A stretch of DNA of 46,752 bases, taken from Macrostomum lignano. Its lineage: Eukaryota. The stretch covers positions 1-46,752 of the forward strand of contig NIVC01001864.1 of the NCBI GenBank assembly GCA_002269645.1, given 5' to 3'. The notes under the pieces were generated by a model, which made no database searches, was not told the DNA's origin, and saw nothing but the letters and a program-made list of their open reading frames with translations. This document shows, one piece after another, positions 7,810-44,897 of the stretch. The number at the start of each line of letters is the position of its first letter. Positions within the stretch are counted from its first letter, which is position 1. The translations under genes were made by a program, and so were the position numbers.

Positions 7810-11869
<4,060 letters not shown>

Positions 11870-16443: not shown

Positions 16444-19400
16444 TCAAAGCGACTCAGTCCGGCCTTGGCCAGGCGGCGCCAGCACGATTCGAGGAAAAGC
16501 GCGCGCGCTTGCCTGGCGCTCGTTAGGCGTCACCCGGATGCCGTCAAGATCTTGGAGGCGCCGGCCGCACTGGGAGATCACGAAGTGTCTGGCGGGAGGT
16601 TGAGGGGGGTAAGCTGGGCTGCTGATGCTGATTGATAATCTTTGCTGAGAGGCGATGCTAGGCGTTGCTAAGGGGCGATGCTAGGCGTTGCTAAGGGGCG
16701 ATGCTAGGCGTTTCTAAGGGGCGATTATAGGGGTTACTAAGGCTAATTATAGGCGTTGCTAAGGCTAATTATAGGCATTGCTAAGGGTAATTATAGGCGT
16801 TGCTAAAGGACGATTCTTGGCGTTGCTAAGCGGCGTTTCTAGGCGTTGCTAAGGGGCGATTATATTGGTTGCTAAGGGTAATTATAGGCGTTGTTAAGGG
16901 GCGATTCTAGGCGTTGGTAAAAGGCAATTCTAGGCGTTGCTAAGGGGCGATTCTAGGCGTTGCTAAGAGGCGATTCTAGGCGTTGCTAAGGGGCGATTCT
17001 AGGCGTCGCTAAGAGGCGATTCTAGGCGTCGCTAAGGGGCGATTCTAGGCATCGCTAAGGGCGATTCTAGGTGTTGCTAAGAGCCGATTTTAGGCGTTGC
17101 TAAGGGGCGTTTCTAGGCTTTGCTAAGGGGAGATTCTAGGCTAGATGGTGCTAGATGTGATTATCAGGACTATTAGATGCTGAGCAAAATATTATTGGCC
17201 CCACCTGTAGTCCTCGTACTCCTGATAAGAGGCGCCATTAAAATAGCTGGGCGCAGCCGGGTTGTCCATCATGGACAGAGAGGCCAGGCTGGGACAGCAG
17301 CGTATGAGCCTGTGCACGCAGTCGGCCAGATTATGCAAACTGTTCCGATTGAGCCACAGTACGCGAAGTCTCGGCAGATTGGGCAGGTGGGCCAGACAGG
17401 TGAGCCGGTTGCCGTCCAGCACCAGGGTGTCCAATCGGGGCAGGCGGGCCAGCTCGCGCAGGGAGGCATCTGTGAGGCAGTTGCCAGACAGATCCAGCTC
17501 GGTAATCTGGTTGCTAGGCGGTTGCCATAGCGCCTGGGCCGAGGCCAGGTCAGTCAGGCCGCGAAAAGCGAGGGAGATTCGCTGAAAGAAGTTAATTTTA
17601 TTGTAGATCTCCGATCCGCAGTTTCAAATGCGCTTCTAAAAATCCTTAAACCCTGACGAGTTCTACTCCAGCTCTCCTACCTCCTCTACCTGAGCCTCTC
17701 CTACCTCCTCTACCTGAGCCTCTCCTACCTCCTCTACCTGAGCCTCTCCTACCACCTCTACCTGAGCCTCTCCTACCACCTCTACCTGAGCCTCTCCTAC
17801 CTCCTCTACCTGAGCCTCTCCTACCACCTCTACCTGAGCCTCTCCTACCACCTCTACCTGAGCCTCTCCTACCTCCTCTACCTGAGCCTCTCCTACCCCC
17901 TCTACCTGAGCCTTTCCTACCACCTCTACCTGAGCCTCTCCTACCCCCTCTACCTGAGCCTCTCCTACCCCTCTACCTGAGCCTCTCCTACCCCTCTACC
18001 TGAGCCTCTCCTACCACCTCTACCTGAGCCTCTCCTACCCCTCTACCTGAGCCTCTCCTACCCCTCTACCTGAGCCTCTCCTACCACCTCTACCTGAGCC
18101 TTTCCTACCACCTCTACCTGAGCCTCTCCTACCCCCTCTACCTGAGCCTTTCCTACCACCTCTACCTGAGCCTCTCCTAACCCTCTACCTGAGCCTCTCC
18201 TACCCCTCTACCTGAGCCTCTCCTACCCCTCTACCTGAGCCTCTCCTACCCCTCTACCTGAGCCTCTCCTACCACCTCTACCTGAGCCTTTCCTACCACC
18301 TCTAACTGAGCCTCTCCTACCCCCTCTACCTGAGCCTTTCCTACCACCTCTACCTGAGCCTCTCCTAACCCTCTAGCTGAGCCTCTCCTACCCCTCTACC
18401 TGAGCCTCTCCTACCCCTCTACCTGAGCCTCTCCTACCACCTCTACCTGAGCCTTTCCTACCACCTCTACCTGAGCCTTTCCTACCACCTCTACCTGAGC
18501 CTCTCCTAACCCTCTAGCTGAGCCTCTCCTACCCTCTACCTGAGCCTCTACTACCCTCTACCTGAGCCTCTCCTACCCCTCTACATGAGCCTCTCCTACC
18601 CCTCTACCTGAGCCTCTCCTACCTCCTCTACCTGAGCCTCTCCTACCCCTCTACCTGAGCCTCTCCTACCCCTCTACCTGAGCCTCTCCTACCTCCTCTA
18701 CCTGAGCCTCTCCTACCACCTCTACCTGAGCCTCTCCTACCTCCTCTACCTGAGCCTCTCCTACCCCTCTACCTGAGCCTCTCCTACCACCTCTACCTGA
18801 GCCTTTCCTACCACCTCTACCTGAGCCTCTCCTACCCTCTACCTGAGCCTCTCCTACCACCTCTACCTGAGCCTCTCCTACCACCTCTACCTGAGCCTCT
18901 CCTACCACCTCTACCTGAGCCTTTCCTACCACCTCTACCTGAGCCTCTCCTACCCCCTCTACCTGAGCCTTTCCTACCACCTCTACCTGAGCCTCTCCTA
19001 ACCCTCTACCTGAGCCTCTACTACCCTCTACCTGAGCCTCTCCTACCCCTCTACATGAGCCTCTCCTACCCCTCTACCTGAGCCTCTCCTACCCCCTCTA
19101 CCTGAGCCTCTCCTACCCCCTCTACCTGAGCCTTTCCTACCACCTCTACCTGAGCCTCTCCTAACCCTCTAGCTGAGCCTCTCCTACCCTCTACCTGAGC
19201 CTCTACTACCCTCTACCTGAGCCTCTCCTACCCCTCTACATGAGCCTCTCCTACCCCTCTACCTGAGCCTCTCCTACCCCCTCTACCTGAGCCTCTCCTA
19301 CCCCCTCTACCTGAGCCTCAGCTACCCCTCTACCTGGGCCTCTCCTACCCCTTTTACCTGAGCCTCTCCTACCCCTTTTACCTGAGCCTCTCCTACCCCT

Positions 19401-22400
19401 TTTACCTGAGCCTCTCCTACCCCTTTTACCTGAGCCTCTCCTACCCCTTTTACCTGAGCCTCTCCTAACCCTCTAGCTGAGCCTCTCCTAACCCTCTAGC
19501 TGAGCCTCTCCTAACCCTCTAGCTGAGCCTCTCCTACCCTCTACCTGAGCCTCTACTACCCTCTACCTGAGCCTCTCCTACCCCTTTTACCTGAGCCTCT
19601 CCTACCCCTTTTACCTGAGCCTCTCCTACCCCTTTTACCTGAGCCTCTCCTACCCCTTTTACCTGAGCCTCTCCTACCCCTCTACCTGAGCCTCTCCTAC
19701 CCCTCTACCTGAGCCTCTCCTACCTCCTCTACCTGAGCCTCTCCTACCACCTCTACCTGAGCCTCTCCTACCTCCTCTACCTGAGCCTCTCCTACCCCTC
19801 TACCTGAGCCTCTCCTACCACCTCTACCTGAGCCTTTCCTACCACCTCTACCTGAGCCTCTCCTACCCTCTACCTGAGCCTCTCCTACCACCTCTACCTG
19901 AGCCTCTCCTACCACCTCTACCTGAGCCTCTCCTACCACCTCTACCTGAGCCTCTCCTACCACCTCTACCTGAGCCTTTCCTACCACCTCTACCTGAGCC
20001 TCTCCTACCCCCTCTACCTGAGCCTTTCCTACCACCTCTACCTGAGCCTCTCCTAACCCTCTACCTGAGCCTCTACTACCCTCTACCTGAGCCTCTCCTA
20101 CCCCTCTACATGAGCCTCTCCTACCCCTCTACCTGAGCCTCTCCTACCCCTCTACCTGAGCCTCTCCTACCCCCTCTACCTGAGCCTTTCCTACCACCTC
20201 TACCTGAGCCTCTCCTAACCCTCTAGCTGAGCCTCTCCTACCCTCTACCTGAGCCTCTACTACCCTCTACCTGAGCCTCTCCTACCCCTCTACATGAGCC
20301 TCTCCTACCCCTCTACCTGAGCCTCTCCTACCCCTCTACCTGAGCCTCTCCTACCCCCTCTACCTGAGCCTCAGCTACCCCTCTACCTGGGCCTCTCCTA
20401 CCCCTTTTACCTGAGCCTCTCCTACCCCTTTTACCTGAGCCTCTCCTACCCCTTTTACCTGAGCCTCTCCTACCCCTTTTACCTGAGCCTCTCCTACCCC
20501 TTTTACCTGAGCCTCTCCTAACCCTCTAGCTGAGCCTCTCCTAACCCTCTAGCTGAGCCTCTCCTAACCCTCTAGCTGAGCCTCTCCTACCCTCTACCTG
20601 AGCCTCTACTACCCTCTACCTGAGCCTCTCCTACCCCTTTTACCTGAGCCTCTCCTACCCCTTTTACCTGAGCCTCTCCTACCCCTTTTACCTGAGCCTC
20701 TCCTACCCCTTTTACCTGAGCCTCTCCTACCCCTCTACCTGAGCCTCTCCTACCCCTCTACCTGAGCCTCTCCTACCTCCTCTACCTGAGCCTCTCCTAC
20801 CACCTCTACCTGAGCCTCTCCTACCTCCTCTACCTGAGCCTCTCCTACCCCTCTACCTGAGCCTCTCCTACCACCTCTACCTGAGCCTTTCCTACCACCT
20901 CTACCTGAGCCTCTCCTACCCTCTACCTGAGCCTCTCCTACCACCTCTACCTGAGCCTCTCCTACCACCTCTACCTGAGCCTCTCCTACCACCTCTACCT
21001 GAGCCTCTCCTACCACCTCTACCTGAGCCTTTCCTACCACCTCTACCTGAGCCTCTCCTACCCCCTCTACCTGAGCCTTTCCTACCACCTCTACCTGAGC
21101 CTCTCCTAACCCTCTACCTGAGCCTCTACTACCCTCTACCTGAGCCTCTCCTACCCCTCTACATGAGCCTCTCCTACCCCTCTACCTGAGCCTCTCCTAC
21201 CCCTCTACCTGAGCCTCTCCTACCCCCTCTACCTGAGCCTTTCCTACCACCTCTACCTGAGCCTCTCCTAACCCTCTAGCTGAGCCTCTCCTACCCTCTA
21301 CCTGAGCCTCTACTACCCTCTACCTGAGCCTCTCCTACCCCTCTACATGAGCCTCTCCTACCCCTCTACCTGAGCCTCTCCTACCCCCTCTACCTGAGCC
21401 TCTCCTACCCCCTCTACCTGAGCCTCAGCTACCCCTCTACCTGGGCCTCTCCTACCCCTTTTACCTGAGCCTCTCCTACCCCTTTTACCTGAGCCTCTCC
21501 TACCCCTTTTACCTGAGCCTCTCCTACCCCTTTTACCTGAGCCTCTCCTACCCCTTTTACCTGAGCCTCTCCTAACCCTCTAGCTGAGCCTCTCCTAACC
21601 CTCTAGCTGAGCCTCTCCTAACCCTCTAGCTGAGCCTCTCCTACCCTCTACCTGAGCCTCTACTACCCTCTACCTGAGCCTCTCCTACCCCTTTTACCTG
21701 AGCCTCTCCTACCCCTTTTACCTGAGCCTCTCCTACCCCTTTTACCTGAGCCTCTCCTACCCCTTTTACCTGAGCCTCTCCTACCCCTCTACCTGAGCCT
21801 CTCCTACCCCTCTACCTGAGCCTCTCCTACCTCCTCTACCTGAGCCTCTCCTACCACCTCTACCTGAGCCTCTCCTACCTCCTCTACCTGAGCCTCTCCT
21901 ACCCCTCTACCTGAGCCTCTCCTACCACCTCTACCTGAGCCTTTCCTACCACCTCTACCTGAGCCTCTCCTACCACCTCTACCTGAGCCTCTCCTACCAC
22001 CTCTACCTGAGCCTCTCCTACCACCTCTACCTGAGCCTCTCCTACCACCTCTACCTGAGCCTCTCCTACCACCTCTACCTGAGCCTTTCCTACCACCTCT
22101 ACCTGAGCCTCTCCTACCCCCTCTACCTGAGCCTTTCCTACCACCTCTACCTGAGCCTCTCCTAACCCTCTACCTGAGCCTCTACTACCCTCTACCTGAG
22201 CCTCTCCTACCCCTCTACATGAGCCTCTCCTACCCCTCTACCTGAGCCTCTCCTACCCCTCTACCTGAGCCTCTCCTACCCCTCTACCTGAGCCTTTCCT
22301 ACCACCTCTACCTGAGCCTCTCCTAACCCTCTAGCTGAGCCTCTCCTACCCTCTACCTGAGCCTCTACTACCCTCTACCTGAGCCTCTCCTACCCCTCTA

Positions 22401-24573
22401 CATGAGCCTCTCCTACCCCTCTACCTGAGCCTCTCCTACCCCCTCTACCTGAGCCTCTCCTACCCCTCTACCTGAGCCTCAGCTACCCTCTACCTGGGCC
22501 TCTCCTACCCCTTTTACCTGAGCCTCTCCTACCCCTTTTACCTGAGCCTCTCCTACCCCTTTTACCTGAGCCTCTCCTACCCCTTTTACCTGAGCCTCTC
22601 CTACCCCTTTTACCTGAGCCTCTCCTAACCCTCTAGCTGAGCCTCTCCTAACCCTCTAGCTGAGCCTCTCCTAACCCTCTAGCTGAGCCTCTCCTACCCT
22701 CTACCTGAGCCTCTACTACCCTCTACCTGAGCCTCTCCTACCCCTTTTACCTGAGCCTCTCCTACCCCTTTTACCTGAGCCTCTCCTACCCCTTTTACCT
22801 GAGCCTCTCCTACCCCTTTTACCTGAGCCTCTCCTACCCCTCTACCTGAGCCTCTCCTACCCCTCTACCTGAGCCTCTCCTACCTCCTCTACCTGAGCCT
22901 CTCCTACCACCTCTACCTGAGCCTCTCCTACCTCCTCTACCTGAGCCTCTCCTACCCCTCTACCTGAGCCTCTCCTACCACCTCTACCTGAGCCTTTCCT
23001 ACCACCTCTACCTGAGCCTCTCCTACCACCTCTACCTGAGCCTCTCCTACCACCTCTACCTGAGCCTCTCCTACCACCTCTACCTGAGCCTCTCCTACCA
23101 CCTCTACCTGAGCCTCTCCTACCACCTCTACCTGAGCCTTTCCTACCACCTCTACCTGAGCCTCTCCTACCCCCTCTACCTGAGCCTTTCCTACCACCTC
23201 TACCTGAGCCTCTCCTAACCCTCTACCTGAGCCTCTACTACCCTCTACCTGAGCCTCTCCTACCCCTCTACATGAGCCTCTCCTACCCCTCTACCTGAGC
23301 CTCTCCTACCCCCTCTACCTGAGCCTCTCCTACCCCCTCTACCTGAGCCTCAGCTACCCCTCTACCTGGGCCTCTCCTACCCCTTTTACCTGAGCCTCTC
23401 CTACCTCCTCTACCTGAGCCTCTCCTACCACCTCTACCTGAGCCTCTCCTACCACCTCTACCTGAGCCTCTCCTACCTCCTCTACCTGAGCCTCTCCTAC
23501 CACCTCTACCTGAGCCTCTCCTACCACCTCTACCTGAGCCTCTCCTACCACCTCTACCTGAGCCTCTCCTACCTCCTCTACCTGAGCCTCTCCTACCACC
23601 TCTACCTGAGCCTCTCCTACCACCTCTACCTGAGCCTCTCCTACCACCTCTACCTGAGCCTTTCCTACCACCTCTACCTGAGCCTCTCCTACCCCCTCTA
23701 CCTGAGCCTTTCCTACCACCTCTACCTGAGCCTCTCCTAACCCTCTAGCTGAGCCTCTCCTACCCTCTACCTGAGCCTCTACTACCCTCTACCTGAGCCT
23801 CTCCTACCCCTCTACATGAGCCTCTCCTACCCCTCTACCTGAGCCTCTCCTACCCCCTCTACCTGAGCCTCTCCTACCCCCTCTACCTGAGCCTCAGCTA
23901 CCCCTCTACCTGGGCCTCTCCTACCCCTTTTACCTGAGCCTCTCCTACCCCTTTTACCTGAGCCTCTCCTACCCCTTTTACCTGAGCCTCTCCTACCCCT
24001 TTTACCTGAGCCTCTCCTAACCCTCTAGCTGAGCCTCTCCTAACCCTCTAGCTGAGCCTCTCCTAACCCTCTAGCTGAGCCTCTCCTACCCTCTACCTGA
24101 GCCTCTACTACCCTCTACCTGAGCCTCTCCTACCCCTTTTACCTGAGCCTCTCCTACCCCTTTTACCTGAGCCTCTCCTACCCCTTTTACCTGAGCCTCT
24201 CCTACCCCTTTTACCTGAGCCTCTCCTACCCCTTTTACCTGAGCCTCTCCTAACCCTCTAGCTGAGCCTCTCCTAACCCTCTAGCTGAGCCTCTCCTAAC
24301 CCTCTAGCTGAGCCTCTCCTACCCTCTACCTGAGCCTCTACTACCCTCTACCTGAGCCTCTCCTACCCCTCTACATGAGCCTCTCCTACCCCTCTACCTG
24401 AGCCTCTTCTACTCCTCTACCTGGGCTTCTCCTACCCCCTCTACCTGAGCTTCTCCTACATGTGCTTTTTTTACCGTGAAATCTCCTAACGGCCTCTACC
24501 AAGTCTCTCCTCCCCTCTCTACCAAGCTGCTCTCTGTTACCTCTCGAATTCTATCCACCAAAAGCCTTCGGAA
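16444..24573 (-). CDS. LRMDA: Leucine-rich melanocyte differentiation-associated protein-like (C10orf11)
   Basis: Exons 17581-17205 and 16588-16444, plus a likely 33-nt first exon at 24573-24541. LRRs followed by the family motif SMMDNPAAPSYFNGASYQEYEDYR|HFVISQ..LQDLDG..VTPNER. No genomic ATG was found (see findings). Confidence 0.8.
16670..17140. repeat. 23-bp minisatellite (TAGGCGTTGCTAAGGGGCGATTC)n
   Basis: Seen directly; in an LRMDA intron. Confidence 0.92.
17664..24460. repeat. 6.8-kb satellite of 22-24-bp units (CTCTACCTGAGCCTCTCCTACCNC) with a ~1,053-bp higher-order repeat
   Basis: The variant unit CAGCTACCCCTCTACCTGGGCC recurs at ~19321, 20374, 21428, 22482, 23353 and 23897. Confidence 0.96.
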
Positions 24574-24794
24574 CTATTCGGACACACAAGATGAGTAAAA
24601 AAATCAACTACACACACAAAAGTCCAGACCAAAAATTCAACACGCGCAGTTAAATTTAGTTTTATCATCAACGCGACAGTTTTGCGCAATTTTTATAGTT
24701 TCAGCTATAACAGCCTATTCAATTTTCTAAATATCAACTCAGTCTGCCTGTCCGCTATTCCGCACGCAAGACCATACCAGCTGCATGGTAACTA

Positions 24795-26889
24795 CTAGGA
24801 GATCTGCGCCGATTTCAGGCTGGGCGCACGGACCTCGCCTTGGCCGGCTACCAGCCAGCGGGCGCCGTTAAATCCGGCGTAGCCGTCCGCATCCACAAGA
24901 CAGTGTGGCTTCAGTGCCTCCCAGATCTTCTTCTTCGGATTGAGCTGCGCGTCTGGAGGCCGCTCGGCCGGACTCGGACAGCCGGCCACGGACACGCGAT
25001 CGCCGGGCGAGACGCCGGACGGAGGCGACAGGATTTCGACTTTACCGGAAGCGGAAGCGCACATGATCATGCCTTCGCTGGAGATGCCGCGCATTTTGGC
25101 CGGCTTCAGGTTCAGCAGGAAGACGGCTAGCCGGCCTGAAGCAGATCAGGGTGAGAAAGGCAAAGTATAGCGTGCAGGAAATATTTGAAGCAACGACTTG
25201 ATTTATGGGGCAGAAAATTTGGGATGCCAGAAGCAGAGTTGATGGAGCAGCAATTGTGGGATGCTGGAAGCAGAGTTGATGGAGGAGCAATTGTGGGATG
25301 CTGGAAGCAGAGTTGATGGAGGAGCAATTGTGGGATGCTGGAAGCATCAATTGCACAGTTGATGGAGAAGCAATTGTGGGATGCTGGAAGCAGAGTTGAT
25401 GGAGCAGCAATTGTGGGGATGCTGGAAGCAGAGTTGATGGAGGAGCAATTGTGGGATGCTGGAAGCATCAATTGCACAGTTGATGGAGAAGCAATTGTGG
25501 GATGCTGGAAGCAGAGTTGATGGAGCAGCAATTGTGGGGATGCTGGAAGCAGAGTTGATGGAGGAGCAATTGTAGGGATGCTGTAGGAGTACCAAAAATC
25601 AGCAAGCCCCCTTCATACCCTGCAGTTCGGGCAGTGGAACATGCGCAGCCAGGCCGCTCACAATGGTTCGCGGCCGCTCCTCGCCAACGTCGACAGTTTC
25701 AACGTAGAGCGCATCGGCGTCCGGGTGCTTCTCGGCGGACACAATGCGGCCAACTCGAAGGTCCAGCCTGGTCACGTCGAGACCGCCGTCGGCGGCAGTG
25801 GGTTCTTTGCCAGCGGTCTTCTTCGACTCGGCTGGCTTGCCGGAATCCTTGGCTTGTCCGGCAGCCTGTGGAAACATTGATTCGATGTATAAATAATTAT
25901 AGCCATCAAGTGCAACTACCGGCGCGGAAATTTACACCCATATAAAAACAAAAAAAGATATTTGCAATATCAAGATCCTCAGCTGCAGGTAGTGTATTTT
26001 TTCATCGTAAAAAGTCGTTACTGGTTCTAATTACTAAGTTTAACTACTAATATATGTGCCTAAATTTTATACATACGAGACTCACTTCACATTCTTTACT
26101 GACTACTATTCAGTAGGCGATCCTATATGCAGTAGTTCAATCAAATCTACACCAACTCTGCTTCCAGCATCCCACAATTGCTGCTCCATCACTCTGCTTC
26201 CAGCATCCCCCAAATTGATGCTCCATCAACTCTGCTTCCTGCATACCACGATTGCTGCTCCATCAACTCTGCTTCCTGCATCCCACAATTGCTGCTCCAT
26301 CAACTCTTGCTTCCTGCATACCACGATTGCTGCTCCATCAACTCTGCTTCCTGCATACCACGATTGCTGCTCCATAAACTCTGCTTCCAGCATCCCACAA
26401 TTGCTGCTCCATAAACTCTGCTTCCAGCATCCCACAATTGCTGCTCCATCAACTATGCTTCAAGCATCCCACAATACTGTTGAGTGTACCTACCTTGCCC
26501 GGCTTTTTATTAGAAGCAGCAGCAGTAGCAGCGGTGGCGGCGCTGCCGGCTTTGGAATCTGCTTTGGGCTTCTCAGCGGCAGCGCTAGGCGTCGGAGCCG
26601 CTACCGTCGCTGAGGCCGACGCAGACGACGGCGGCTCCGGACGAAGCAGCGGCACCTGGGCGACGCCGTTGCGCATCTGCAGCCGGATCATTTCGTCGCG
26701 CAGACGGTCGGCTTCGGCGCGCAGCTCGGCGTTCTCGGCGATCAGCTGATCGCGCAGCTGCTGCCGCTGCTGGCTGGCGGCGTCGCCAGTGGACTTGGCG
26801 GCGGCCGACTGAAGCATCGCCAGCTGGCCGCGCACCTCGGCCAGGAGCTCCTGGGCCAGCTGTTGCTGCTGTTGAGCCGCAGTTGCCAT
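24795..26889 (-). CDS. AIMP1: Aminoacyl-tRNA synthetase complex-interacting multifunctional protein 1 (p43/EMAPII, tRNA-binding OB fold)
   Basis: Exons 26889-26494, 25865-25619, 25135-24795. N-terminal coiled coil ENAELRAE...[10 protein letters not shown] fold [68 protein letters not shown]. Confidence 0.93.
25222..25585 (+). repeat. 37-bp minisatellite (GGATGCTGGAAGCAGAGTTGATGGAGGAGCAATTGTG)n, AIMP1 intron 2
   Basis: Seen directly. Confidence 0.93.
26150..26472 (-). repeat. Same 37-bp minisatellite in inverted orientation, AIMP1 intron 1
   Basis: The unit CACAATTGCTGCTCCATCAACTCTGCTTCCAGCATCC is the reverse complement of the 25222-25585 unit. Confidence 0.92.
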
Positions 26890-34599: not shown

Positions 34600-36702
34600 T
34601 CAGTTATAACCGCTGGGCACGCCGCGCCGCCGCCTGTCCTGCAGGAGGGCGGTCCTGCCGATCAGCTGGTGCACAGTGTTAGTGGCCTGGATCAGGGTGC
34701 CAAGCAGAGCTGTCAGCTGCACATCGTTGCACTGACGATAGAATGACCGATAGAAATCTTCACCGCCGCACACAGGCAGCTGGTCGGCTAGTCGGCGAAG
34801 GTCGCGCAGAATAGCGTGACACGGCGGCAGCCGGCCGGCGGACACGTCGCGCAGATAGGACAGTAGTAGGCCAAGGCGGCTGTACAGGGCGCGGACAGCG
34901 CTGCGCTGTACGGCTAGGGCTTCGGCAACCTAGCGGGTAAATATCAAAAAAATGAATAATGCCTTTTATTATTGATGCAATTTGTATTGAAGTTAATATT
35001 CCTTTTTGCGGCCTAGTTGGTACTGCAAGCTTTCAATTCAATCATAGATACGGAAATCAGACTTGCGAGACTGAAAATTGTCGACACTCGTTGGCAACAA
35101 GTACAAAAAGATTAGCGATGAAGTGGCTACAAGTGAAAGTCCGTACTGTTTACTCGATTCGAAGGCGGTACGAACTTACAAATTCGGCTTTTTGGCCATA
35201 GACATTGAGTCTTAGCGGGCGCAGCTAAATATGCTTGCTCGCTTGCTTTTAGGACTACATAAGGCATTGAGCAATACCAGACCGTAACTTCTTAATGCAT
35301 CATGCAGTTTTTATACTTTGTGGGGCTTATGACAACAATGCCTCGAGCTCGCGACAAACCTTAGTCCCACCGCTGCCGGACATATCCCTGGACACGTGGT
35401 CAACCCCGATTCGCTCGGCCTCCTCGGTGGCCAGACTGTAAGGCAGGGGTATGAACAGACACTTGGGCGAGCCGTTCACCAGTTCTAGCACGGATTCGAA
35501 TAGACGAACCGGCAGGGATTCGGCCGTGGTAGCCGCTGAGCTGGGCAGCAGGCGGAGCAACACCGGCATTAGTGGCGAGTCCGACATTACAAGATCGCAC
35601 ACCTGCTTGTGCAAGGCTGCCTCAGTGTCGGTCACCTGTGGGTGCGGTTTTTAGGACTAATGCATGATTAATATTGATTTTGGCGCAATTATTGACGATA
35701 ATTCAATATTGAGTAGCCTAGTGGTTAGAGCGTCGGACCCACGACTTGAAGGTCGGGGGTTCGACTCCCGATCCCACTGGAACAATTTGTCCTTGGGCAA
35801 GACACTCAACTCTGTATTGCTGAGCTGTCGGTTGCACATCTGGCCCAATTAGGGCAGGTGTAATCAATTATTTTTATTTTTATTATTAATATTGAGTAGC
35901 TCAGCCGCAGCTATTGCGCGGCGCATCTGAAGGCTGCGTACGGCTGTTCAGTTCAAAGACTGGGGGGTCGTCAATTACCCCAGCGAATACTGGCACTCAT
36001 TTTACAGTTGGGTGGACTTGCTCAAGGACAAATTGTTCCGAGTGGGTCGAGAATCGAACCCCCGACCTCTCAGTCTTGAGTCCGACGCCCTAACCACTAC
36101 GTACAATCCCCTCTTCGGAAAAACAACTTTTATATTTTCATCACTGCATTTTTCTACTTAAAGTAGAAAATTTGGAATTTTATTACTATATTTAAAAAAA
36201 TGAACAACTTAAGAATATTATTTCAGATACAGGGCAGGGGCTGTGTAATTAGATTGCTGGTGATCACGACTACTTCCTTGTCCCAACATTTTACCTCTTC
36301 AGGCAGGTCGCAGCAGTAGTACCAGCCAACCACAGTGAGGCTAGGATAGACCTCGCGATACTGGGCCAGCCTAGTCTGAAAGAATCCAGCATCAATAGTG
36401 TCAATATCGGCTGTCTGCGGATTAGCCGGCGAGAAATATGGCGCCAATTCGAAACAGTTGCAAATTTCTACTAGGCGACCTTCCTGCTTGCCTAACAGGG
36501 CGCCTAGTACCCGATTGTGACCGAACTGCAGCCGGCAGCGGGTCCAGTGATCGGAGATGGTTAGCAGTACCAGCGGGTGCAGGGCGGCGTTCACGGACGG
36601 CTGCACGCCTTGCGGAGCCATGTGGCCCGGCGAGCCTGCGGACAAAGAGTCTGAAGCTGATGCGGCAGCTGTCCCGGAGGTTGTAGAAGCGTCTACTTCC
36701 AT
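34600..36702 (-). CDS. COPS6: COP9 signalosome subunit 6 (MPN domain)
   Basis: Exons 36702-36295, 35635-35360, 34929-34600. Motifs LHPLVLLTISDHWTR, LGALLGKQEGR.VEI.N.FEL, YSLATEEAERIGVDHVSR, FYRQCNDVQLTALLGTL. Confidence 0.93.
35718..35887 (+). mobile_element. tRNA-derived CORE-like SINE with 13-bp target-site duplication
   Basis: A box TAGCCTAGTGG, B box GGTTCGACTCC, CORE-like TCCTTGGGCAAGACACTCAAC, T/A-rich tail. Flanked by AATATTGAGTAGC at 35705-35717 and 35888-35900. Confidence 0.72.
35901..36112 (-). mobile_element. Related tRNA-derived SINE in opposite orientation (COPS6 intron 1)
   Basis: Head GGGGATTGTACGTAGTGGTTAGGGCGTCGGAC...GGGGGTTCGATTCTCGACCC, then GGAACAATTTGTCCTTGAGCAAG (shared with the adjacent copy) and CACCCAACTGTAAAATGAGT. 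Confidence 0.7.
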
Positions 36703-37449: not shown

Positions 37450-40400
37450 TTAAGTAGCCGCGTCGCTTTTGTGCAGCATTCGGAAGTGCCGTAACAAATT
37501 GCCGCGCTGGGAGAACCGAATGCCGCACACTTTGCACAGGTGCGGCCTGGGCTTGTCGGAGTGCAGCAGCATGTGCGTCACTAACGAGGATCGCTGGGTA
37601 AAACTAATATTGCAACTTGAGCACACGTGCTTAGAGTCCTCCCTACTGTTGTGCGACTCCTCGTGACGGCGGAGGTGCGACTGACAGGTGAACTCGCGAT
37701 CACAGGCGTAGCACTTGTGCAAACCCTGCAGCTTACTTGGCCGCTTGGCTGCCGACGAGGGTGCTGAGGCGATGGAATCGACCGTGCCGGCCGCCTCGCA
37801 AGTGTGGGAAGCGTAAGCTAGCAAACTATTGAAGAACTGCAAGCACTGGTCGCAGCGGTAGCTTCGCTTGTAGCTGCTGCTGATGACGGCGGCGGAGGCG
37901 GCTGCAGACGACGACCCGGCGGTGCCCGATGTCGGCGGAGCGTCGGGCAGGCGTCGATAATTCCGACCGCCAGTACGCTGGATGGCGGAACCGTTTGACG
38001 CCGACGATGAAGATGCTAGCAAAGTTGTCTGCGGCGGTGGCGGCGGAGGACCGGGCTCGCCGCTGAGCTCCTTCAGGAGTGACTCGCTGGCAGCCTGACC
38101 AGCCAAGTCGGAACCGTCAAACTGCTGTCCGGCTGTGCAGCTGTCCGGTTGCTGCTGCTGCTGCTGTTCAGCTATGACAACCATCTTGTCGACGGCGTCG
38201 ATGTCGATTTCTAACGCCGGGTCGACAACAGCCGATGTGCTGGAGGCCGCAACGGCCGCAGTCGGAACAGTCGATGCCGAAGCATTAGAGGCAGAAGCAG
38301 CGGCGGTTGCAGCGGCGGTGGCGGCAACAGCTGACACGGAGCTGACAGTTGAAGGTGCCGACGTAGTCTGGAAACCGTAGCCTTGCAGCAGAAGCGACAG
38401 GTCGCTGTGATCGGACTCAGCTAGGAGCAGAGTGGGGCCCCCGACTGACCCGGCCGTACCGGAGCTCACGATGTCGCCGGAGGCGGTGAGCATGTCGGTG
38501 TTGCTTATAACGTATAACACATTGCCAGAATCTACACTAAGAACCAATTGCTGCTGTTGTTGTTGTTGCTGTTGCTGAGACTGTTGATGGAATTGCTGCT
38601 GCTGAAGGATCAACTCCTGCTGCTGCTGCTGTTGTTGCTGCTGTTGTTGCTGCTGCTTCTTCTGCAACTGGCGCTGCCTGTACCGCTGCCGCCTTCGCTG
38701 CTGCTGCAGAAGATCCCTCTGCGGTGGCTGCCTCTGCCGCCGATTCGGCTGTCGAGACCCCGTTGCCGCTGTTGCCGATGACGCCGACGCTGAGCCCGTC
38801 GCCGTCTCGACTTCCGACGTAGACGGCGCGGGCCCGGATGGGGCGGCTTCCTCAGCAACTGCGGACAGCTGCTGCCGTTGCCGATTACCGTCCGCACCAA
38901 CAGGAATGGGCCGAACCCTAGCAGTGGTCGGATCCCGTTTAAGCAGCATATTGTGGCTCTTTAAATAGTGCCGCTTTCTACTCGACGAAGAGTGAAAACT
39001 GTCCGAGCACAGCTGGCACTGGTAGGGCTTGGCGTCGGCGTGCAAATTCATATGGGTTCGCAGGCTGCTCTTCGATGAGAAGTAGTTCTTGCATAGATGG
39101 CAGGCCAGCAGCTTCACCTGCGAGATTGGAGAGTTGCCCCCGAAAATTCGGGTATAGCAAAGTTTAATAATGATATAGTGCTTTGGTCTCTATGGTGCTG
39201 GCGCCCACTGACACAATTCTCTATTATTGCTATTAATTTACTGTTGCTTTAACATCTGTGCCGCGTGGCAGCAAGAGTTACGGGGGGGGGGGTAAAAGGC
39301 GATTCCCTAGGGGGAGGGTGTTAAAGGGCGCATTCCGATTGGGAGGGGGTTAAAGGGCGATTCCACAGGGGGAGGGGGTCAGAGGGCGATTCCACAGGGG
39401 GAGGGGGTCAGAGGGCGATTCCACAGGGGGAGGGGTCAGAGGGCGATTCCACAGGGGAGGGGGTCAGAGGGCGATTCCACAGGGGGAGTGGGTTAAAGGG
39501 CGATTTCCCACGGGGAGGGGTTAAAGGGCGATCCCCAGGGGGTGGGGGTGTTAAAGGGCGATTCCCCAGGGGAGGGGGTTAAAGAGCGACTTCCAGGCGG
39601 GGATTAAGGGGCGGCTCCCAGACGAGGGTTAGAGGAATGTGCAGAAGTCTGCAGAATCTTTAGAGGCCCTAAAGAAGCGATGAAAATGCTGGTACACAAA
39701 AATTCAATTAACAACTCAAAACCCACCTGTTGACTGTGCAGCCTGCTCATGTGATACTTCAACGAGCTGCTAGCCGTGAAAGTTTTCTGACAGACGCTAC
39801 AACTAAACGGCCTGGCCCCGATGTGCACGTTGCTGTGCCGCACAAGTTCAACCCGTCTGGAAAACTGGGCGTGACAGATGTCGCACTCGAATCCAGCGCC
39901 GGCAGTGTCGCTAACGCCGCCCTCCTCGGCGACACCGACGCGCCGATGATGAGCAGCGGACGAGGCGGAGGCAGCCGCGGCGGTGAAGCCAGCTAGTTCA
40001 TCATCGGTGTGCCGAGATTTGGCGGCTCTGACTAGCATGCGCTGCGAGACGGTCATGTCAGTGGTGAGCGCCGATTGGGCCAGGCTGCGAGTCTCGTCCT
40101 CCGGCAGGCGAAGCTGGCAGCGCCGCTCCCGGACAAAGTCCCGACTGCCCAGCTGGTAGTGGCGCGCCTTGAAGCATTTGTGGGATTGAGATGGAGCTCA
40201 AATCTGTGCTATAAATACAAGACCAATACAAGCTACTTAAGCTCATTCCATATGCGTAACACCATAGTCCAAATCATGATAATGTTGTCCAATCCAAGCC
40301 ACGCTTAATTACGATTCAAACTATTTCAATTCTAATTCTATTTCTAACACGCTTAAATTCTAATCCAAGCCACTCCATTCCGATCTAAGCCACTACATTC

Positions 40401-43400
40401 CAATCCAAGCCACTCTATTCCAATCCAAGCCACTGCATTCCAATCCAAGCCACTGCATTCCAATCTAAGCCACTCCATTCCAATCCAAGCCACTGCATTC
40501 CAATCTAAGCCACTCCATTCCAATCCAAGCCACTGCATTCCAATCGATCTAAGCCACTCCATTCCAATCGATCCAAGCTACTCCATTCCAATCGATCCAA
40601 GCCACTCCATTCCAATCGATCTAAGCCACTCCATTCCAATCGATCCAAGCCACTCCATTCCAATCGATCCAAGCCACTCCATTCCAATCCAAGCCACTGC
40701 ATTCCAATTGATCCAAGCCACTCCATTTCAATCTAATCCACTCCATTTCAATCTAAGCCACGCCATTCCAATCCAAGCCACTCCATTCCAATCCAAGCCA
40801 CTCCATTCCAATCCAAGCCACTCCATTCCAATCTAAGCCACTCCATTCCAATCGATCCAAGCCACTCCATTCCAATCCAAGCCACTCCATTCCAATCCAA
40901 GCCACTCCATTTCAATCCAAACCAATTCATTCCAATCTAAGCCACTAAATTCCAATCGAAGTCATGAAATTTCAATCTAAGCCACTTTATGCCAGTCAAA
41001 TCAGCTAAATACTAATCCAAGCCACTGAATTTCATTTCCCAACCCAAGCCAATCAAGCAATAACCCCTGGCTCACTTTTTTCAAATCCACAATCAGACTT
41101 TCCCGTTCGGAGCGCAGTTCACCAATATGCAATTGCAAATGCTTAATATTGTGAAAGTCCCGCTCGCAATGGTTGCACCGAAAATGGCGCCTATCATTGT
41201 GCCGCATAGTCGTGTGCACAGCCAGTGCGCTCTGGCTAACGAACTCTTGGCCGCAGTCTCGGCACTGCTTTGGCTGGTCGGGCTGATGAGCCAGCTGGTG
41301 ATTTTTCAACGCCAGCTCAGATAGGAAGGCCTTGCCGCACAGTTCGCACGAGTGCCTCTCCTGGTGATGCTCAGTGCGCACGTGCAATTGCAATTGTTTA
41401 GCTTTGTAGAAGCTGCGCTGGCATTTAGCGCAGCCGTAGTAAGCGTCTAGGCTAATCTGCGAAAGGTAAAATTAAGGGAGCAAAGGCCGTCAGTTGAAGC
41501 AGTTCTTTAAGACTACTCGAGGTATAGATACACTATATATCTGCGCAGGCAGATTCAGGGAGAGAAAGCGGAGAGGCAGATTCAGGGACAGAAAGCGGAG
41601 AGGCAGATTCAGGGACAGAAAGCGGAGAGGCAGATTCAGGGACAGAAAGCGGAGAGGCAGATTCAGGGACAGAAAGCGGAGAGGCAGATTCAGGGACAGA
41701 AAGCGGAGAGGCAGATTCAGGGACAGAAAGCGGAGAGGCAGATTTAGGGAGAGAAAGCGGAGAGGCAGATTCAGGGACAGTAAGCGGAGAGGCAGATTCA
41801 GGGAGAGAAAGCGGAGAGGCAGATTCAGGGACAGTAAGCGGAGAGGCAGATTCAGGGAGAGAAAGCGGAGAGGCAGATTCAGGGACAGTAAGCGGAGAGG
41901 CAGATTCAGGGAGAGAAAGCGGAGAGGCAGATTCAGGGACAGTAAGCGGAGAGGCAGATTCAGGGACAGAAAGCGGAGAGGCAGATTCAGGGACAGAAAG
42001 CGGAGAGGCAGATTCAGGGACAGAAAGCGGAGAGGCAGATTCAGGGACAGAAAGCGGAGAGGCAGATTCAGGGACAGTAAGCGGAGAGGCAGATTCAGGG
42101 ACAGAAAGCGGAGAGGCAGATTCAGGGAGAGAAAGCGGAGAGGCAGATTCAGGGAGAGAAAGCGGAGAGGCAGATTCAGGGACAGAAAGCGGAGAGGCAG
42201 ATTCAGGGACAGAAAGCGGAGAGGCAGATTCAGAGAGAGAAAGCGGAGAGGCAGATTCAGGGAGAGAAAGCGGAGAGGCAGATTCAGGAGAAGAGAAGCG
42301 GAGAAGCAGATTCAGGGAGAGAAAGCGGAGAGGCAGATTCAGGGACAGTAAGCGGAGAGGCAGATTCAGGGAGAGAAAGCGGAGAGGCAGATTCAGGAGG
42401 AGAAAGCGGAGAGGCAGATTCAGGGACAGAAAGCGGAGAGGCAGATTCAGAAGGAGAAAGCGGAGAGGCAGATTCAGGGACAGAAAGCGGAGAGGCAGAT
42501 TCAGGGACAGAAAGCGGAGAGGCAGATTCAGGGACAGAAAGCGGAGAGGCAGATTCAGGGAGAAAGCGGAGAGGCAAAGAGCAGATTCAGGGACAGTAAG
42601 CGGAGAGGCAGATTCAGGGACAGAAAGCGGAGAGGCAGATTCAGGGACAGAAAGCGGAGAGGCAGATTCAGGGACAGAAAGCGGAGAGGCAGATTCAGGG
42701 ACAGAAAGCGGAGAGGCAGATTCAGGGACAGAAAGCGGAGAGGCAGATTCAGGGAGAGAAAGCGGAGAGGCAGATTCAGGAGAGAAAGCGGAGAGGCAGA
42801 TTCAGGGAGAGAAAGCGGAGAGGCAGATTCAGAGAGAGAAAGCGGAGAGGCAGATTCAGGGACAGTAAGCGAGAGGCAGATTCAGGGAGAGAAAGCGGAG
42901 AGGCAGATTCAGGGACAGTAAGCGAGAGGCAGATTCAGGGAGAGAAAGCGGAGAGGCAGATTCAGGGACAGTAAGCGGAGAGGCAGATTCAGGGAGAGAA
43001 AGCGGAGAGGCAGATTCAGGAGAGAAAGCGGAGAGGCAGATTCAGGGACAGTAAGCGGAGAGGCAGATTCAGGCAGAAAGCGGAGAGGCAGATTCAGGGA
43101 GAGAGACCACAGACGCAGTTTATGCTCACCAGATCGTCACTCTTCGGTATAGGATATTGATTAACAGTTGCCGTGCCATCGCTAGCGTACAAAGCCTCAG
43201 TCAGCTGAGGAAAATCAGCGGCAGACAGTACGCTAGACAGTGGCAAGTTGAGATCCGGTTCAGTAACTGTAGCCGGGTTAGCCGCCCGATTCAATGACAG
43301 AGAGTTATGATTATTAGCTGCGATTGCGTTATCGCCAGACGGAATTCTTCCGAGGCTAGACGAGCCGGACACAGCAGCGGCAGAGGCGGCAGCAGTGGAG

Positions 43401-44897
43401 GTAACGGATTGTACCGGCATAGATGACACCGGCACGGAGGCGGCCGCATCCAAGCTGGGATCGCCCAGATGGGTGGGCACAACAGCATCTAGACTGTCCA
43501 TCCCGGTAAGGCAGTTGTTTAACAGCCGATCGAAATCCTGCTCGATAACAGGGGCCGAGCCGTCCTGCAGATTCGATAGGAACGAAGCATCAGTCGGGCA
43601 CAGGCTGGTCAGCGCGTCCTGCATCATGTCGTCGGTTGGTAGGACAGGAGCCGGGGCCTGCGGTGGGTCCGGGACCAGAGCCAGTGCGTAGCTGGTGCGC
43701 GGCACCGGGTCGCCGCGGCGAGTGTGCGCGATGGAGTGGCGCTTGCACTTGGTTCGGGTGCGGAAGCCCTGCGCGCAGTGCGGATGGTGGAAATTATGCG
43801 GAGTCTGCTGTTGCTGCGGCAGCGGAGATTCGATTAGATATCGCTGCAGATGGGGGTACTAAACTCGAACTATTCCCTATTAAGGTTACCGCACATTTAA
43901 ACTAAGCGGATTATGCCTTTTGATGAATGGAAGTACGTAGGGTATTGCTACCCCATAATTTAGAGCCCGAGTATTGTTAACGCTCCCATCCTTCGGAGAG
44001 TATTGCTGTCAGATCCATCAGTGGGTATTGCTATGCCAGATCCATCAGTGGGTATTGCTATGCCAGATCCATCAGTGGGTATTGCTATGCCAGATCCATC
44101 AGTGGGTATTGCTATGCCAGATCTATCAGTGGATATTGCTATGCCAGATCCATCAGTGGGTATTGTTATGCCAGATCTATCAGTGGATATTGCTATGCCA
44201 GATCCATCAGTGGGTATTTCTATGCCAGATCTATCAGTGGATATTGCTATGCCAGATCCATCAGTGGGTATTTCTATGCCAGATCTATCAGTGGATATTG
44301 CTATGCCAGATCTATCAGTGGGTATTGCTACAGTACCTTGTGGCAGACTTTGCAGAAGAAGCTGACGCCGTCTCCATGCCAGTTGTCAATGTGCCGATTC
44401 AAATTGCTGCGACTTTTAAACGACATATTAGGACAGCGGTCGCACACGTAGGGCCGCTGGCCGCCGTGCACGGCTCGAATGTGCTGCTGCAATACATTCG
44501 AGGTGCTGTACATTCGATGGCACATCTGGCACTTGTGCGGCTTCAAATTCGAATGGCTCATAGCGTGGCGCTGGAGGTGGCCTTTCTTTTTAAAGATTTT
44601 GCCGCAATCTTTGCACCGATGCGGCCGGCTGGGATCCGGGGCGTCGGCTACAACGCCCTGACTGCGGCCGGGAGCGGACGGCACCAGCACCCGCTGGAAC
44701 TGGCTGTCGTAGACAATCTCCAACGGGTCTAAGGCCGGCGCCGGGTCCAGCTGCGGCTCCAGTACGCGCGACACGGTGCGCAGATCCCGGGCCGGATGAG
44801 TGCGCATGTGATATTTCAAATTGCTCTTAGTGATGAAGCGATGGAAGCAGTATTTGCAACTGTAGGGATAGCTCTGCTCGTGGCGTCGCAAGTGCAC
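37450..44897 (-). CDS. Large multi-cluster C2H2 zinc-finger protein (about 16-18 fingers, polyQ/polyA linkers); 5'-partial
   Basis: Exons 44897-44337, 43843-43130, 41456-41123, ~40190-39727 (acceptor uncertain), 39117-37450. Repeated CxxC-x12-HxxxH fingers, e.g. HRCKDCGKIFKKKGHLQRHAMSH and HLCKVCGIRFSQRGNLLRHFRMLH. The 44897 exon begins mid-finger after an AG. Confidence 0.88.
39283..39603. repeat. G-rich 28/29-bp minisatellite (GAGGGCGATTCCACAGGGGGAGGGGTCA)n
   Basis: Seen directly; intronic. Confidence 0.9.
40352..40985. repeat. 20/24-bp minisatellite (ATTCCAATCCAAGCCACTCC)n
   Basis: Seen directly; intronic. Confidence 0.93.
41547..43102. repeat. 27-bp minisatellite (GGCAGATTCAGGGACAGAAAGCGGAGA)n
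   Basis: Seen directly; intronic; source of the RFRDRKRRG ORF. Confidence 0.96.
43990..44330. repeat. 27-bp minisatellite (CCAGATCCATCAGTGGGTATTGCTATG)n
   Basis: Seen directly; begins a few nt into the intron after the 44337 donor. Confidence 0.93.

What the first reader, a model, noticed from the sequence alone, without database searches (positions are those of the whole stretch)
24541..24795. LRMDA appears to lack a genomic start codon; an AIMP1-LRMDA operon with a spliced-leader AUG would explain it
The LRMDA exon at 17581 opens in frame with no Met until far past the LRRs. No usable ATG was found between it and AIMP1; the ATGs in the satellite read ATG-TAG. About 220 nt after the AIMP1 stop there is a U-rich tract and AG (TTTTTTTACTCATCTTGTGTGTCCGAATAG), then a 33-nt phase-0 exon (24573-24541, FRRLLVDRIRE) and a GTAACA donor. 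An in-frame TAG immediately upstream excludes read-in. Poly(A)-like GATAAAA (~24666) and a GU/U-rich tract lie ~90 nt before the acceptor, resembling intercistronic regions of nematode operons. Flatworm spliced leaders end in AUG, and use of that AUG as initiator is established in Schistosoma. SL + this exon gives M-FRRLLVDRIRE-RISLAFRGL..., exactly in frame. Translation of this gene would then depend on trans-splicing.
Basis: partly seen in the sequence, partly recalled or inferred. Interest (0 to 1): 0.78.

Follow-up and report, generated by a model that had tools for sequence, protein, structure and literature searches.

The report
Flatworm gene borrowing its start codon
A small leucine-rich-repeat gene of the flatworm Macrostomum lignano has no start codon in the genome and most likely takes it from the trans-spliced leader RNA, a known flatworm mechanism, but the 33-base exon proposed as the attachment point is not supported.

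Summary
The window is Macrostomum lignano (Mlig_3_7, contig NIVC01001864.1, bases 1-46752). The sequence details in the finding are correct. The LRMDA-like gene (BOX15_Mlig020796) has no genomic start codon. All GenBank models of its copies are marked 'partial', and all seven gene-model sequences from two assemblies lack a Met.

The proposed 33-nt exon (24573-24541) is not supported:
- Such AG...GT phase-0 stretches occur at chance level: 21 in that 335-nt segment, against a mean of 25 in shuffles.
- One paralogous copy has an in-frame TGA at its second codon, although its LRMDA exons are identical.
- No gene model includes the exon.
- Its donor lies in decayed satellite repeats.

The simpler reading is that the spliced leader, which ends in ATG, joins directly at the acceptor TTCTTTCAG|CGA (17582|17581). 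That is also in frame and gives M-RISLAFRGL. This acceptor is the only match to the published trans-splice motif in the 7.2 kb after AIMP1. The only AATAAA in that interval lies 13 nt upstream of it.

Subtracting the satellite leaves 425 nt between AIMP1 and LRMDA, so the pair meets the published operon criterion. Co-transcription is untested.

In passing: AIMP1 itself starts at a trans-acceptor with no ATG in one paralog. In the window, a genomic ATG sits at exactly that position.

No transcript read was available, so the conclusion is indirect.

The parts
24795..26889 (-). AIMP1-like gene (BOX15_Mlig023292g1; tRNA_bind/EMAP-II domain). Genomic ATG at 26889-26887. Exons 26889-26494, 25865-25619 and 25135-24795. 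Stop TAG at 24797-24795.
   Evidence: Pfam tRNA_bind. The splice model reproduces the GenBank products of the paralogs exactly. Coordinates verified.
24460..24794 (-). Non-repeat segment between the AIMP1 stop and the satellite. It is either AIMP1 3'UTR or intergenic. It has no AATAAA/ATTAAA and no YTNCAG motif.
   Evidence: It differs by 2.1% and 2.7% from paralogs L004 and L005.
24541..24573 (-). The claimed 33-nt phase-0 exon (FRRLLVDRIRE). Judged not to be an exon.
   Evidence: Chance level. TTT TGA in L004 and TTT CGA in L005. Absent from all gene models. The donor lies in decayed satellite units.
17672..24459 (-). Minisatellite with a 23-24-nt unit (GCTCAGGTAGAGGGGTAGGAGAG on the gene strand), about 289 copies and 6.8 kb here. 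The two paralogous loci carry only about 1.4-1.5 kb.
   Evidence: TRF.
17582..17671 (-). Non-repeat 90 nt immediately upstream of the LRMDA-like exon. It holds AATAAA at 17602-17597, TTAAC (branch-like) and the acceptor TTCTTTCAG with AG at 17583-17582. This is the proposed SL trans-splice acceptor.
   Evidence: It contains the only YTNCAG and the only AATAAA in 17582-24794. The chance of AATAAA lying that close is about 2.5%. The acceptor and AATAAA are identical in all copies; the 90 nt differ at one base in L004 and L005.
17205..17581 (-). LRMDA-like exon A (RISLAFRGL...YEDY-R). It is open from its first base and in phase 0 with an ATG placed directly before it.
   Evidence: GenBank CDS of the three distinct loci start 3, 6 and 9 nt into this exon. 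ML2 model A0A1I8ISW7 starts exactly at R.
16444..16588 (-). LRMDA-like exon B (HFVISQ...TESL, stop TGA at 16446-16444). The intron spans 17204-16589 (GTGGGG...CCGCCAG).
   Evidence: tblastn with P0001. The reconstructed 170-aa product is an exact match to PAA47413.1/PAA63177.1.

Best explanation
The LRMDA-like gene of M. lignano (BOX15_Mlig020796, a 173-codon, two-exon LRR_9 protein) encodes no initiator codon in the genome. Its pre-mRNA is SL trans-spliced at the acceptor TTCTTTCAG| (AG at 17583-17582). The 35-nt spliced leader ends in AUG, so the mature mRNA reads ...UUGCAUG|CGA AUC UCC. Translation starts at the leader's AUG and gives M-RISLAFRGL... (174 aa).

The sequence upstream of the acceptor is discarded: the 90 nt of unique sequence, the 6.8-kb satellite and the 335 nt after AIMP1. 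It is either an outron or the 3' part of an AIMP1-containing precursor.

The gene pair meets the operational operon criterion for this species, so co-transcription with AIMP1 is plausible. The only AATAAA in the interval lies 13 nt before the acceptor. This suggests that 3'-end formation of an upstream transcript and SL addition may be adjacent.

Shown here: the absence of a genomic AUG, the frame, the motif, the paralog conservation and the gene-model boundaries.

Inferred: SL addition at this site, use of the SL AUG, and co-transcription.
For: 1. There is no in-frame ATG between the TGA at 17626-17624 and codon 104. Two out-of-frame ATGs come first.
2. Residues from R1 onward are conserved in distant homologs, so coding starts at or before the exon boundary.
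3. The acceptor fits the published M. lignano trans-acceptor motif [T/C]TNCAG (PMC8629364). It is the only such motif in the 7.2 kb between AIMP1 and the exon.
4. The SL ends in ATG (PMC8629364; PMC10468722 calls it a likely translation start codon). Joined at 17581 it is in frame.
5. Seven gene-model sequences from two assemblies all lack a Met. They start exactly at R, or 1-3 codons later, or read into the outron (INFFQ-RISLAF). None carries an upstream exon.
6. Homologs have very short N-termini, for example MS-RLSLAYRGL, MDKRG-RLSLAFRGL and MSVRDVVK-RISLAYRDL. M-RISLAFRGL is therefore a complete protein.
7. The neighbouring AIMP1-like gene has the same architecture in paralog L005. Its 'partial' CDS begins at GCA directly after TTTTCCAG|. 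In the window and in L004 a genomic ATG sits at exactly that position. A leader-supplied ATG and a genome-encoded ATG thus occupy the same position before the same codons.
8. About 30-39% of M. lignano genes are SL trans-spliced, enriched among conserved genes (PMC8629364, PMC5730564).
9. For the operon: the two genes are on the same strand and adjacent in all three distinct loci, with consecutive GenBank protein accessions. The repeat-adjusted distance is 425 nt, under 1 kb. AATAAA lies 13 nt before the acceptor, with a chance of about 2.5%.
Against: No transcript or read with the SL joined to 17581 could be inspected. The protein collection holds no M+RISLAF product, and the two metagenome scans were empty because that collection holds no M. 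lignano LRMDA sequence at all.

The GenBank CDS starts are 3, 6 and 9 nt after the acceptor rather than exactly at it. The models may therefore simply be 5'-truncated.

Whether this gene was flagged as trans-spliced in the Mlig_RNA_3_7 annotation could not be looked up.

The SL AUG has a weak context (U at -3).

For the operon, a 1.4-6.8-kb satellite inside an intercistronic region is unusual, the AIMP1 poly(A) site is unknown, and an own promoter for LRMDA is not excluded.
Confidence: 0.72

Rival explanations
1. First reader's model. The SL is added at AG 24575-24574 to a 33-nt exon (24573-24541, FRRLLVDRIRE). That exon is cis-spliced over a 6.96-kb satellite intron to 17581, giving M-FRRLLVDRIRE-RISLAF...
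For: The pattern exists and is in frame, with a U-rich tract upstream and a GT after it. Some homologs have N-terminal extensions of this length.
Against: The pattern is at chance level. Paralog L004 reads TTT TGA (stop at codon 2) while its LRMDA exons are 100% identical, and L005 also differs in codon 1. That is 2/33 and 1/33 changes, against 0/377 and 2/377 in exon A. The acceptor AATAG does not fit YTNCAG. The donor lies in decayed satellite units. No gene model from either assembly contains the exon. It shows no similarity to homolog N-termini.
Confidence: 0.03
2. A conventional, unannotated upstream exon supplies the ATG by cis-splicing into 17581. One example is one of the formal candidates after the AIMP1 stop, such as ATGCAGCTG|GTATGG at 24786-24778 (M-Q-L-RISLAF). 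Another is an exon elsewhere.
For: There are 9 formal ATG...|GT phase-0 candidates in 24794-24460. The ATGCAGCTG|GT candidate is kept in all three copies.
Against: These are expected by chance. All gene models built from deep RNA-seq stop at the 17582 acceptor and are 5'-partial. Such an exon would need a promoter inside or right after the AIMP1 last exon and a 1.8-7.2-kb satellite intron.
Confidence: 0.1
3. The gene is SL trans-spliced at 17582 and uses the SL AUG, but as a monocistronic unit. It would have its own promoter in or just downstream of the satellite, and would not form an operon with AIMP1.
For: About 60% of trans-spliced M. lignano genes are not in operons (PMC8629364). The raw distance to AIMP1 is 1.8-7.2 kb. 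The fused ML2 model A0A1I8ISW7 starts at LRMDA and does not include AIMP1.
Against: The repeat-adjusted distance is 425 nt. The authors of the operon study found that repeats inflate operon spacings. AATAAA next to the acceptor suggests an upstream transcript ends there.
Confidence: 0.4
4. The locus copies are non-functional or mis-assembled at their 5' ends. That would mean a pseudogene or a missing first exon hidden by collapse of the satellite.
For: The region is repeat-rich. The assembly carries redundant contigs (L003 is near-identical to the window).
Against: Three distinct loci keep an intact ORF with only 0-2 synonymous differences and identical splice sites. The ORF is conserved with distant homologs over its whole length. 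The 90 nt between satellite and exon are assembled identically in every copy.
Confidence: 0.04

Closest known systems
[quoted passage not shown]
   Same: The SL ends in AUG. The recipient ORF is open from the acceptor, in frame, and has no AUG of its own near the 5' end.
   Different: The species differs (free-living Macrostomum), and there is no experimental or read-level proof here. New here is paralog evidence in the neighbouring AIMP1 gene, where a genomic ATG occupies exactly the position of the leader's ATG.
Macrostomum lignano SL trans-splicing and operons (Ustyantsev and Berezikov 2021, PMC8629364; Wudarski et al. 2017, PMC5730564)
   Same: There is a single 35-nt SL ending in ATG. The acceptor motif is [T/C]TNCAG. 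Operons are defined by same-strand neighbours less than 1 kb apart after subtracting repeats, and repeats are known to inflate operon spacings.
   Different: Those papers do not analyse use of the SL ATG as a start codon. The trans-spliced status of this particular gene could not be read from their data here.
Operons without an intercistronic spacer, where the poly(A) signal of the upstream gene lies just before the trans-splice acceptor of the downstream gene (C. elegans SL1-type operons, Ciona, Oikopleura; from general knowledge)
   Same: The only AATAAA in the 7.2-kb interval lies 13 nt upstream of the acceptor AG.
   Different: It is unknown whether AIMP1 mRNA ends there. If so, its 3'UTR would contain the whole satellite (1.8-7.2 kb depending on the copy).
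Relict spliced-leader sequence in genomic gene copies through recycling of processed cDNA (dinoflagellates, Slamovits and Keeling 2008; from memory)
   Same: In the window and in L004, AIMP1 is preceded by TTGCATG, the last 7 nt of the SL, where paralogs have the acceptor TTTCCAG.
   Different: Only 3 bases differ and introns are retained. TTGCATG is not rare (3 in the window, 4 expected). A point-mutation path CAG->AAG->ATG is an equally good explanation.

Membership tests
mRNA that takes its initiator AUG from the flatworm spliced leader | The species' SL ends in AUG | tested here: met
   Literature: SL CGGTCTCTTACTGCGAAGACTCAATTTATTGCATG (PMC8629364; PMC10468722). No SL RNA gene lies in the window.
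mRNA that takes its initiator AUG from the flatworm spliced leader | The ORF is open from the acceptor and in frame with an AUG placed directly before the exon | tested here: met
   ATG|CGA ATC TCC gives MRISLAF... through to the stop.
mRNA that takes its initiator AUG from the flatworm spliced leader | No genome-encoded in-frame AUG is able to start the conserved protein | tested here: met
   A TGA lies 14 codons upstream with no ATG between. The first in-frame ATG is at codon 104, past the LRRs. All gene models lack a Met.
mRNA that takes its initiator AUG from the flatworm spliced leader | The SL is actually joined at this acceptor in mature mRNA | not testable with these tools
   No RNA reads or transcripts of M. 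lignano were reachable. Indirect support: the motif match, and gene models that start at the acceptor or 3-9 nt after it, plus two that read through it.
mRNA that takes its initiator AUG from the flatworm spliced leader | Translation starts at the SL AUG | not testable with these tools
   This needs N-terminal proteomics, ribosome profiling or a reporter.
M. lignano operon (operational definition of Ustyantsev and Berezikov 2021) | Adjacent genes on the same strand with no gene between them | tested here: met
   The order AIMP1 then LRMDA holds in three distinct loci, with consecutive GenBank protein accessions.
M. lignano operon (operational definition of Ustyantsev and Berezikov 2021) | Intergenic distance under 1 kb after subtracting repeats | tested here: met
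   7213 nt minus the 6788-nt satellite leaves 425 nt.
M. lignano operon (operational definition of Ustyantsev and Berezikov 2021) | The downstream gene is SL trans-spliced | tested here: inconclusive
   There is motif, frame and gene-model evidence only. No SL reads were seen.
Operon in the strict sense (one precursor transcript) | A polycistronic pre-mRNA spans both genes | not testable with these tools
   This needs RT-PCR or long-read RNA data across 24795-17581.
LRMDA (leucine-rich melanocyte differentiation-associated protein) family | A small (about 170-200 aa) LRR_9-type protein with an LRR cap motif of the type N-x-A-x-P...DY-x-x-YR-x-FV | tested here: inconclusive
   Pfam hits are LRR_4, LRR_8 and LRR_9 only. 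UniRef names the ML2 models 'LRRC51'. Orthology was not established.
AIMP1 / EMAP-II-type tRNA-binding protein | C-terminal tRNA_bind (OB-fold) domain | tested here: met
   PF01588 is split over the last two exons. UniRef names it a tRNA-binding domain-containing protein. AIMP1 as opposed to another EMAP-II-domain protein was not tested.

The most novel reading that the evidence does not exclude
AIMP1, a variable 1.4-6.8-kb G-rich minisatellite and LRMDA form one transcription unit. The upstream mRNA is cleaved at the AATAAA 13 nt before the LRMDA acceptor, and the SL is added there. LRMDA translation then depends wholly on the leader's AUG. In the same locus, paralogous AIMP1 copies have switched between a leader-donated and a genome-encoded AUG at the identical nucleotide position (CAG| versus ATG). 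That would be a natural demonstration that the two are interchangeable, and of how genes enter or leave dependence on trans-splicing.
Probability: 0.25. Interest if true: 0.55.

Novelty: new member of a known kind. Interest (0 to 1): 0.35.

Why it matters
If confirmed, this gene cannot be translated without trans-splicing. It would be a clear Macrostomum example of the SL-AUG mechanism shown experimentally in Schistosoma.

There is a practical consequence. Gene models in M. lignano and other flatworms that are marked 5'-partial and begin at a YTNCAG acceptor may be complete proteins once the leader's ATG is added. Annotation pipelines that trim the whole SL create artificial fragments.

The AIMP1 paralogs (acceptor in one copy, ATG in the others) give a simple handle on how start codons and trans-splice acceptors replace each other. 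This species can be made transgenic, so reporter tests are feasible.

Tried and rejected
- **SL RNA gene in the window.** Searched for it and found none.
- **Exact look-ups of hypothetical products.** M+RISLAF..., M+FRRLLVDRIRE+RISLAF..., MQL+RISLAF... and SL-read-through variants are not in the protein collection. Only the 170- and 172-aa partial products are.
- **The look-up of encoding contigs with the spliced 170-aa product.** Cluster members P0003 and P0006 were used as anchors instead.
- **Supplementary tables and full text of the M. lignano papers.** Searched for LRMDA, C10orf11, AIMP1, Mlig020796 and Mlig023292 with no hits. Wasik et al. 2015 is not held.
- **Metagenome scans.** Searched for the SL-exon junction and for an exon-internal control. 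Both were empty, so the negative result is uninformative.
- **Homolog N-termini.** They do not discriminate the two SL models by length, but they show that nothing is missing from M-RISLAF.
- **SL-likeness of TTGCATG before the AIMP1 ATG.** The heptamer is not rare, so a cDNA-templated origin was not adopted as a conclusion.
- **L003.** It is a near-identical redundant contig and gave no comparative information.


Full report
**Where the window comes from.**
An exact look-up of the 588-aa single-exon ORF at 14505-12739 placed the window on Macrostomum lignano assembly Mlig_3_7 (GCA_002269645.1), contig NIVC01001864.1. Window coordinates equal record coordinates. The window is rich in minisatellites. 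M. lignano has a single 35-nt spliced leader, CGGTCTCTTACTGCGAAGACTCAATTTATTGCATG. [quoted passage not shown]

**The observation.**
Every sequence detail of the finding is present on the minus strand.
- The AIMP1-like gene (tRNA_bind domain) ends with TAG at 24797-24795.
- 220 nt later there is a U-rich tract and an AG (24575-24574), with TAG in frame upstream.
- A 33-nt open stretch follows (24573-24541, FRRLLVDRIRE), then GTAACA.
- A 6.8-kb satellite with a 23-24-nt unit spans 24459-17672.
- After 90 unique bases comes the acceptor TTCTTTCAG, and an exon starts at 17581 (RISLAFRGL...).
- This exon is open from its first base. The frame upstream closes with TGA at 17626-17624 with no ATG between. 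The first in-frame ATG is codon 104, after two out-of-frame ATGs.

The gene has two exons, 17581-17205 and 16588-16444.

**Independent confirmation that the start codon is missing.**
The reconstructed product starting at LAFRGL is an exact match to GenBank PAA47413.1/PAA63177.1, 'hypothetical protein BOX15_Mlig020796g1, partial'. Two further copies are also 'partial': g2 (PAA63184.1, starts SLAFRGL) and g3 (PAA48312.1, starts ISLAFRGL). UniRef models from the older ML2 assembly start INFFQRISLAF, reading into the non-coding sequence before the acceptor. One fused model (A0A1I8ISW7) starts exactly at RISLAFRGL. None has a Met. None of the hypothetical Met-bearing products is in the collection.

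**Test of the 33-nt exon: chance.**
The 335-nt unique segment after AIMP1 contains 21 AG...GT phase-0 stop-free candidates, 9 of them at least 30 nt long. Dinucleotide shuffles give a mean of 25, and 99.5% have at least one candidate of 30 nt or more. The same segment also has 9 formal ATG...|GT phase-0 candidates. Patterns of this kind carry no weight, and 'no usable ATG' is not strictly correct.

**Test of the 33-nt exon: paralogs.**
Two further copies of the whole locus were fetched.
- L004 lies on the same contig at 59-83 kb, inverted.
- L005 lies on NIVC01004182.1.

In these copies the AIMP1-LRMDA spacing is 1.83 and 1.96 kb because the satellite is shorter. The 33-nt stretch reads as follows:

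| Copy | First two codons | Effect |
|---|---|---|
| Window | TTC CGA | F R |
| L005 | TTT CGA | F R (synonymous) |
| L004 | TTT TGA | stop at codon 2 |

The LRMDA exons of L004 are 100% identical to the window. The surrounding 335 nt differ by 2.1% (L004) and 2.7% (L005), while exon A differs by 0 and 2 of 377 nt. The stretch therefore evolves like non-coding DNA.

**Test of the 33-nt exon: other points.**
Its acceptor (AATAG) does not fit the published motif [T/C]TNCAG. Its donor lies in decayed satellite units. No gene model includes it.

**The simpler model.**
The acceptor at 17582 is TTTCAG, a match to [T/C]TNCAG. It is the only such motif on this strand in the 7.2 kb between the AIMP1 stop and the exon. 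An ATG placed directly before 17581 is in frame and gives MRISLAFRGL...TESL, 174 aa.

Distant homologs found by an exhaustive HMMER search have very short N-termini before the same motif: MS-RLSLAYRGL, MDKRG-RLSLAFRGL, MTSSG-RLSLAYRDL and MSVRDVVK-RISLAYRDL. Nothing is missing from a protein that starts M-RISLAF.

The GenBank CDS of the three distinct loci start 3, 6 and 9 nt after this acceptor, and the ML2 fused model starts at it. No model carries an exon upstream of the acceptor. Why the GenBank starts are offset by whole codons is not explained. The same order (L005 < L004 < window) is seen for AIMP1, which points to a pipeline effect.

**Supporting case in the same locus.**
In L005 the AIMP1-like CDS (PAA48311.1, 'partial', 326 aa) begins at GCA directly after ...CTTTTTATTTTCCAG|, with no genomic ATG. 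In the window and in L004 the same position reads ...CTTATTATTTGCATG|GCA. The acceptor CAG is replaced by ATG (26889-26887), giving M-ATAAQQ.

The change TCCAG->GCATG is three substitutions within four bases. Only three other differences occur in 121 aligned columns. ML2 models that start LIIFQ-ATAAQQ show the acceptor state on the same sequence background, so the acceptor state is probably ancestral.

A leader-donated ATG and a genome-encoded ATG thus occupy the identical position in paralogs. This is indirect genetic support that the SL AUG is used as initiator in this species. The resulting TTGCATG equals the last 7 nt of the SL, but that heptamer is not rare. A cDNA-templated origin is only a possibility.

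**Operon question.**
AIMP1 and LRMDA are adjacent on the same strand in all three distinct loci, with consecutive GenBank protein accessions. After subtracting the satellite the spacing is 425 nt, below the 1-kb repeat-adjusted threshold used to call operons in M. lignano. The authors of that study note that repeats inflate operon spacings.

The interval has no AATAAA or ATTAAA except one AATAAA at 17602-17597, 13 nt before the acceptor AG. The chance of this position is about 2.5%. That resembles operons in which the upstream poly(A) signal abuts the downstream trans-splice site.

Co-transcription, the AIMP1 poly(A) site and the absence of an own promoter were not testable here. I rate the operon reading at roughly even odds.

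**Identity of the gene.**
Pfam gives only generic LRR families (LRR_4, LRR_8, LRR_9). UniRef auto-names the ML2 models LRRC51. 'LRMDA-like' is reasonable, but orthology is not established.

**Comparison with what is known, and verdict.**
Use of the flatworm SL 3'-terminal AUG as initiator was shown in Schistosoma mansoni (Cheng et al. 2006, cited in PMC12582326). The M. lignano SL is known to end in ATG, described as a likely translation start codon (PMC10468722).

The finding is therefore a probable new member of a known kind. The mechanism in general terms is likely. The specific 33-nt exon at the finding's coordinates should be dropped in favour of SL addition at 17582. The conclusion is indirect because no RNA reads could be examined.

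Noticed in passing
window 26893-26884 (minus strand); L004 6343-6354; L005 5254-5265: The AIMP1-like start differs between paralogs at one spot. L005 has a trans-acceptor TTTTCCAG|GCA and no ATG. The window and L004 have TTTGCATG|GCA, with a genomic ATG exactly where the leader's ATG would lie. That is three substitutions within 4 nt, and the resulting TTGCATG equals the SL 3' end.
   Followed up: partly
window 17597-17602 (minus strand): The only canonical poly(A) signal (AATAAA) in the 7.2 kb between AIMP1 and LRMDA lies 13 nt upstream of the LRMDA acceptor AG. It is conserved in all copies. It may mark coupled 3'-end formation and trans-splicing.
   Followed up: partly
window 17672-24459; L004 about 8460-9900; L005 about 8340-9905: The G-rich minisatellite (23-24-nt unit) between the two genes varies from about 1.4-1.5 kb to 6.8 kb between paralogous loci. 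Each unit carries CAG|GTAGAG, a donor-like sequence on the transcribed strand.
   Followed up: no
contig NIVC01001864.1: window 12-27 kb versus 59-83 kb (L004): The block of AIMP1, LRMDA and the following same-strand genes (a 588-aa LRR gene and a PAQR gene in the window; only the PAQR gene is listed in L004) is present twice on the same contig in inverted orientation. It occurs again on NIVC01004182.1 (L005). NIVC01004463.1 (L003) carries a near-identical redundant copy of the LRMDA-to-LRR-gene part and ends in the satellite.
   Followed up: partly
GenBank CDS starts: LRMDA +3/+6/+9 nt and AIMP1 0/+3/+6 nt after the acceptor position (L005/L004/window): The 5'-partial CDS of both genes are shortened by whole codons in the same order across copies, although the sequences there are identical. 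This looks like an annotation-pipeline effect (SL trimming of de novo transcripts?). It is not explained.
   Followed up: no
UniRef100_A0A1I8ISW7 (P0007, 981 aa): This ML2 gene model fuses LRMDA, the 588-aa LRR gene, the PAQR-like gene and further sequence into one protein starting at RISLAFRGL. It may reflect a polycistronic transcript or read-through evidence downstream of LRMDA.
   Followed up: no
window about 31690 (minus strand); L005 780-800: The gene upstream of AIMP1 (464-aa product, 5'-partial in GenBank) has a TTCCAG acceptor-type motif just before its first in-frame ATG (MHATEHQF). An SL ATG added there would be out of frame and would open a 9-codon uORF overlapping the start.
   Followed up: no
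window 37453-44921 (minus strand): A cluster of C2H2 zinc-finger ORFs (37453-39189, 39607-40197, 41004-41471, 43097-43858, 44331-44921) is separated by minisatellites. An MPN-domain-like ORF lies at 34603-34929.
   Followed up: no
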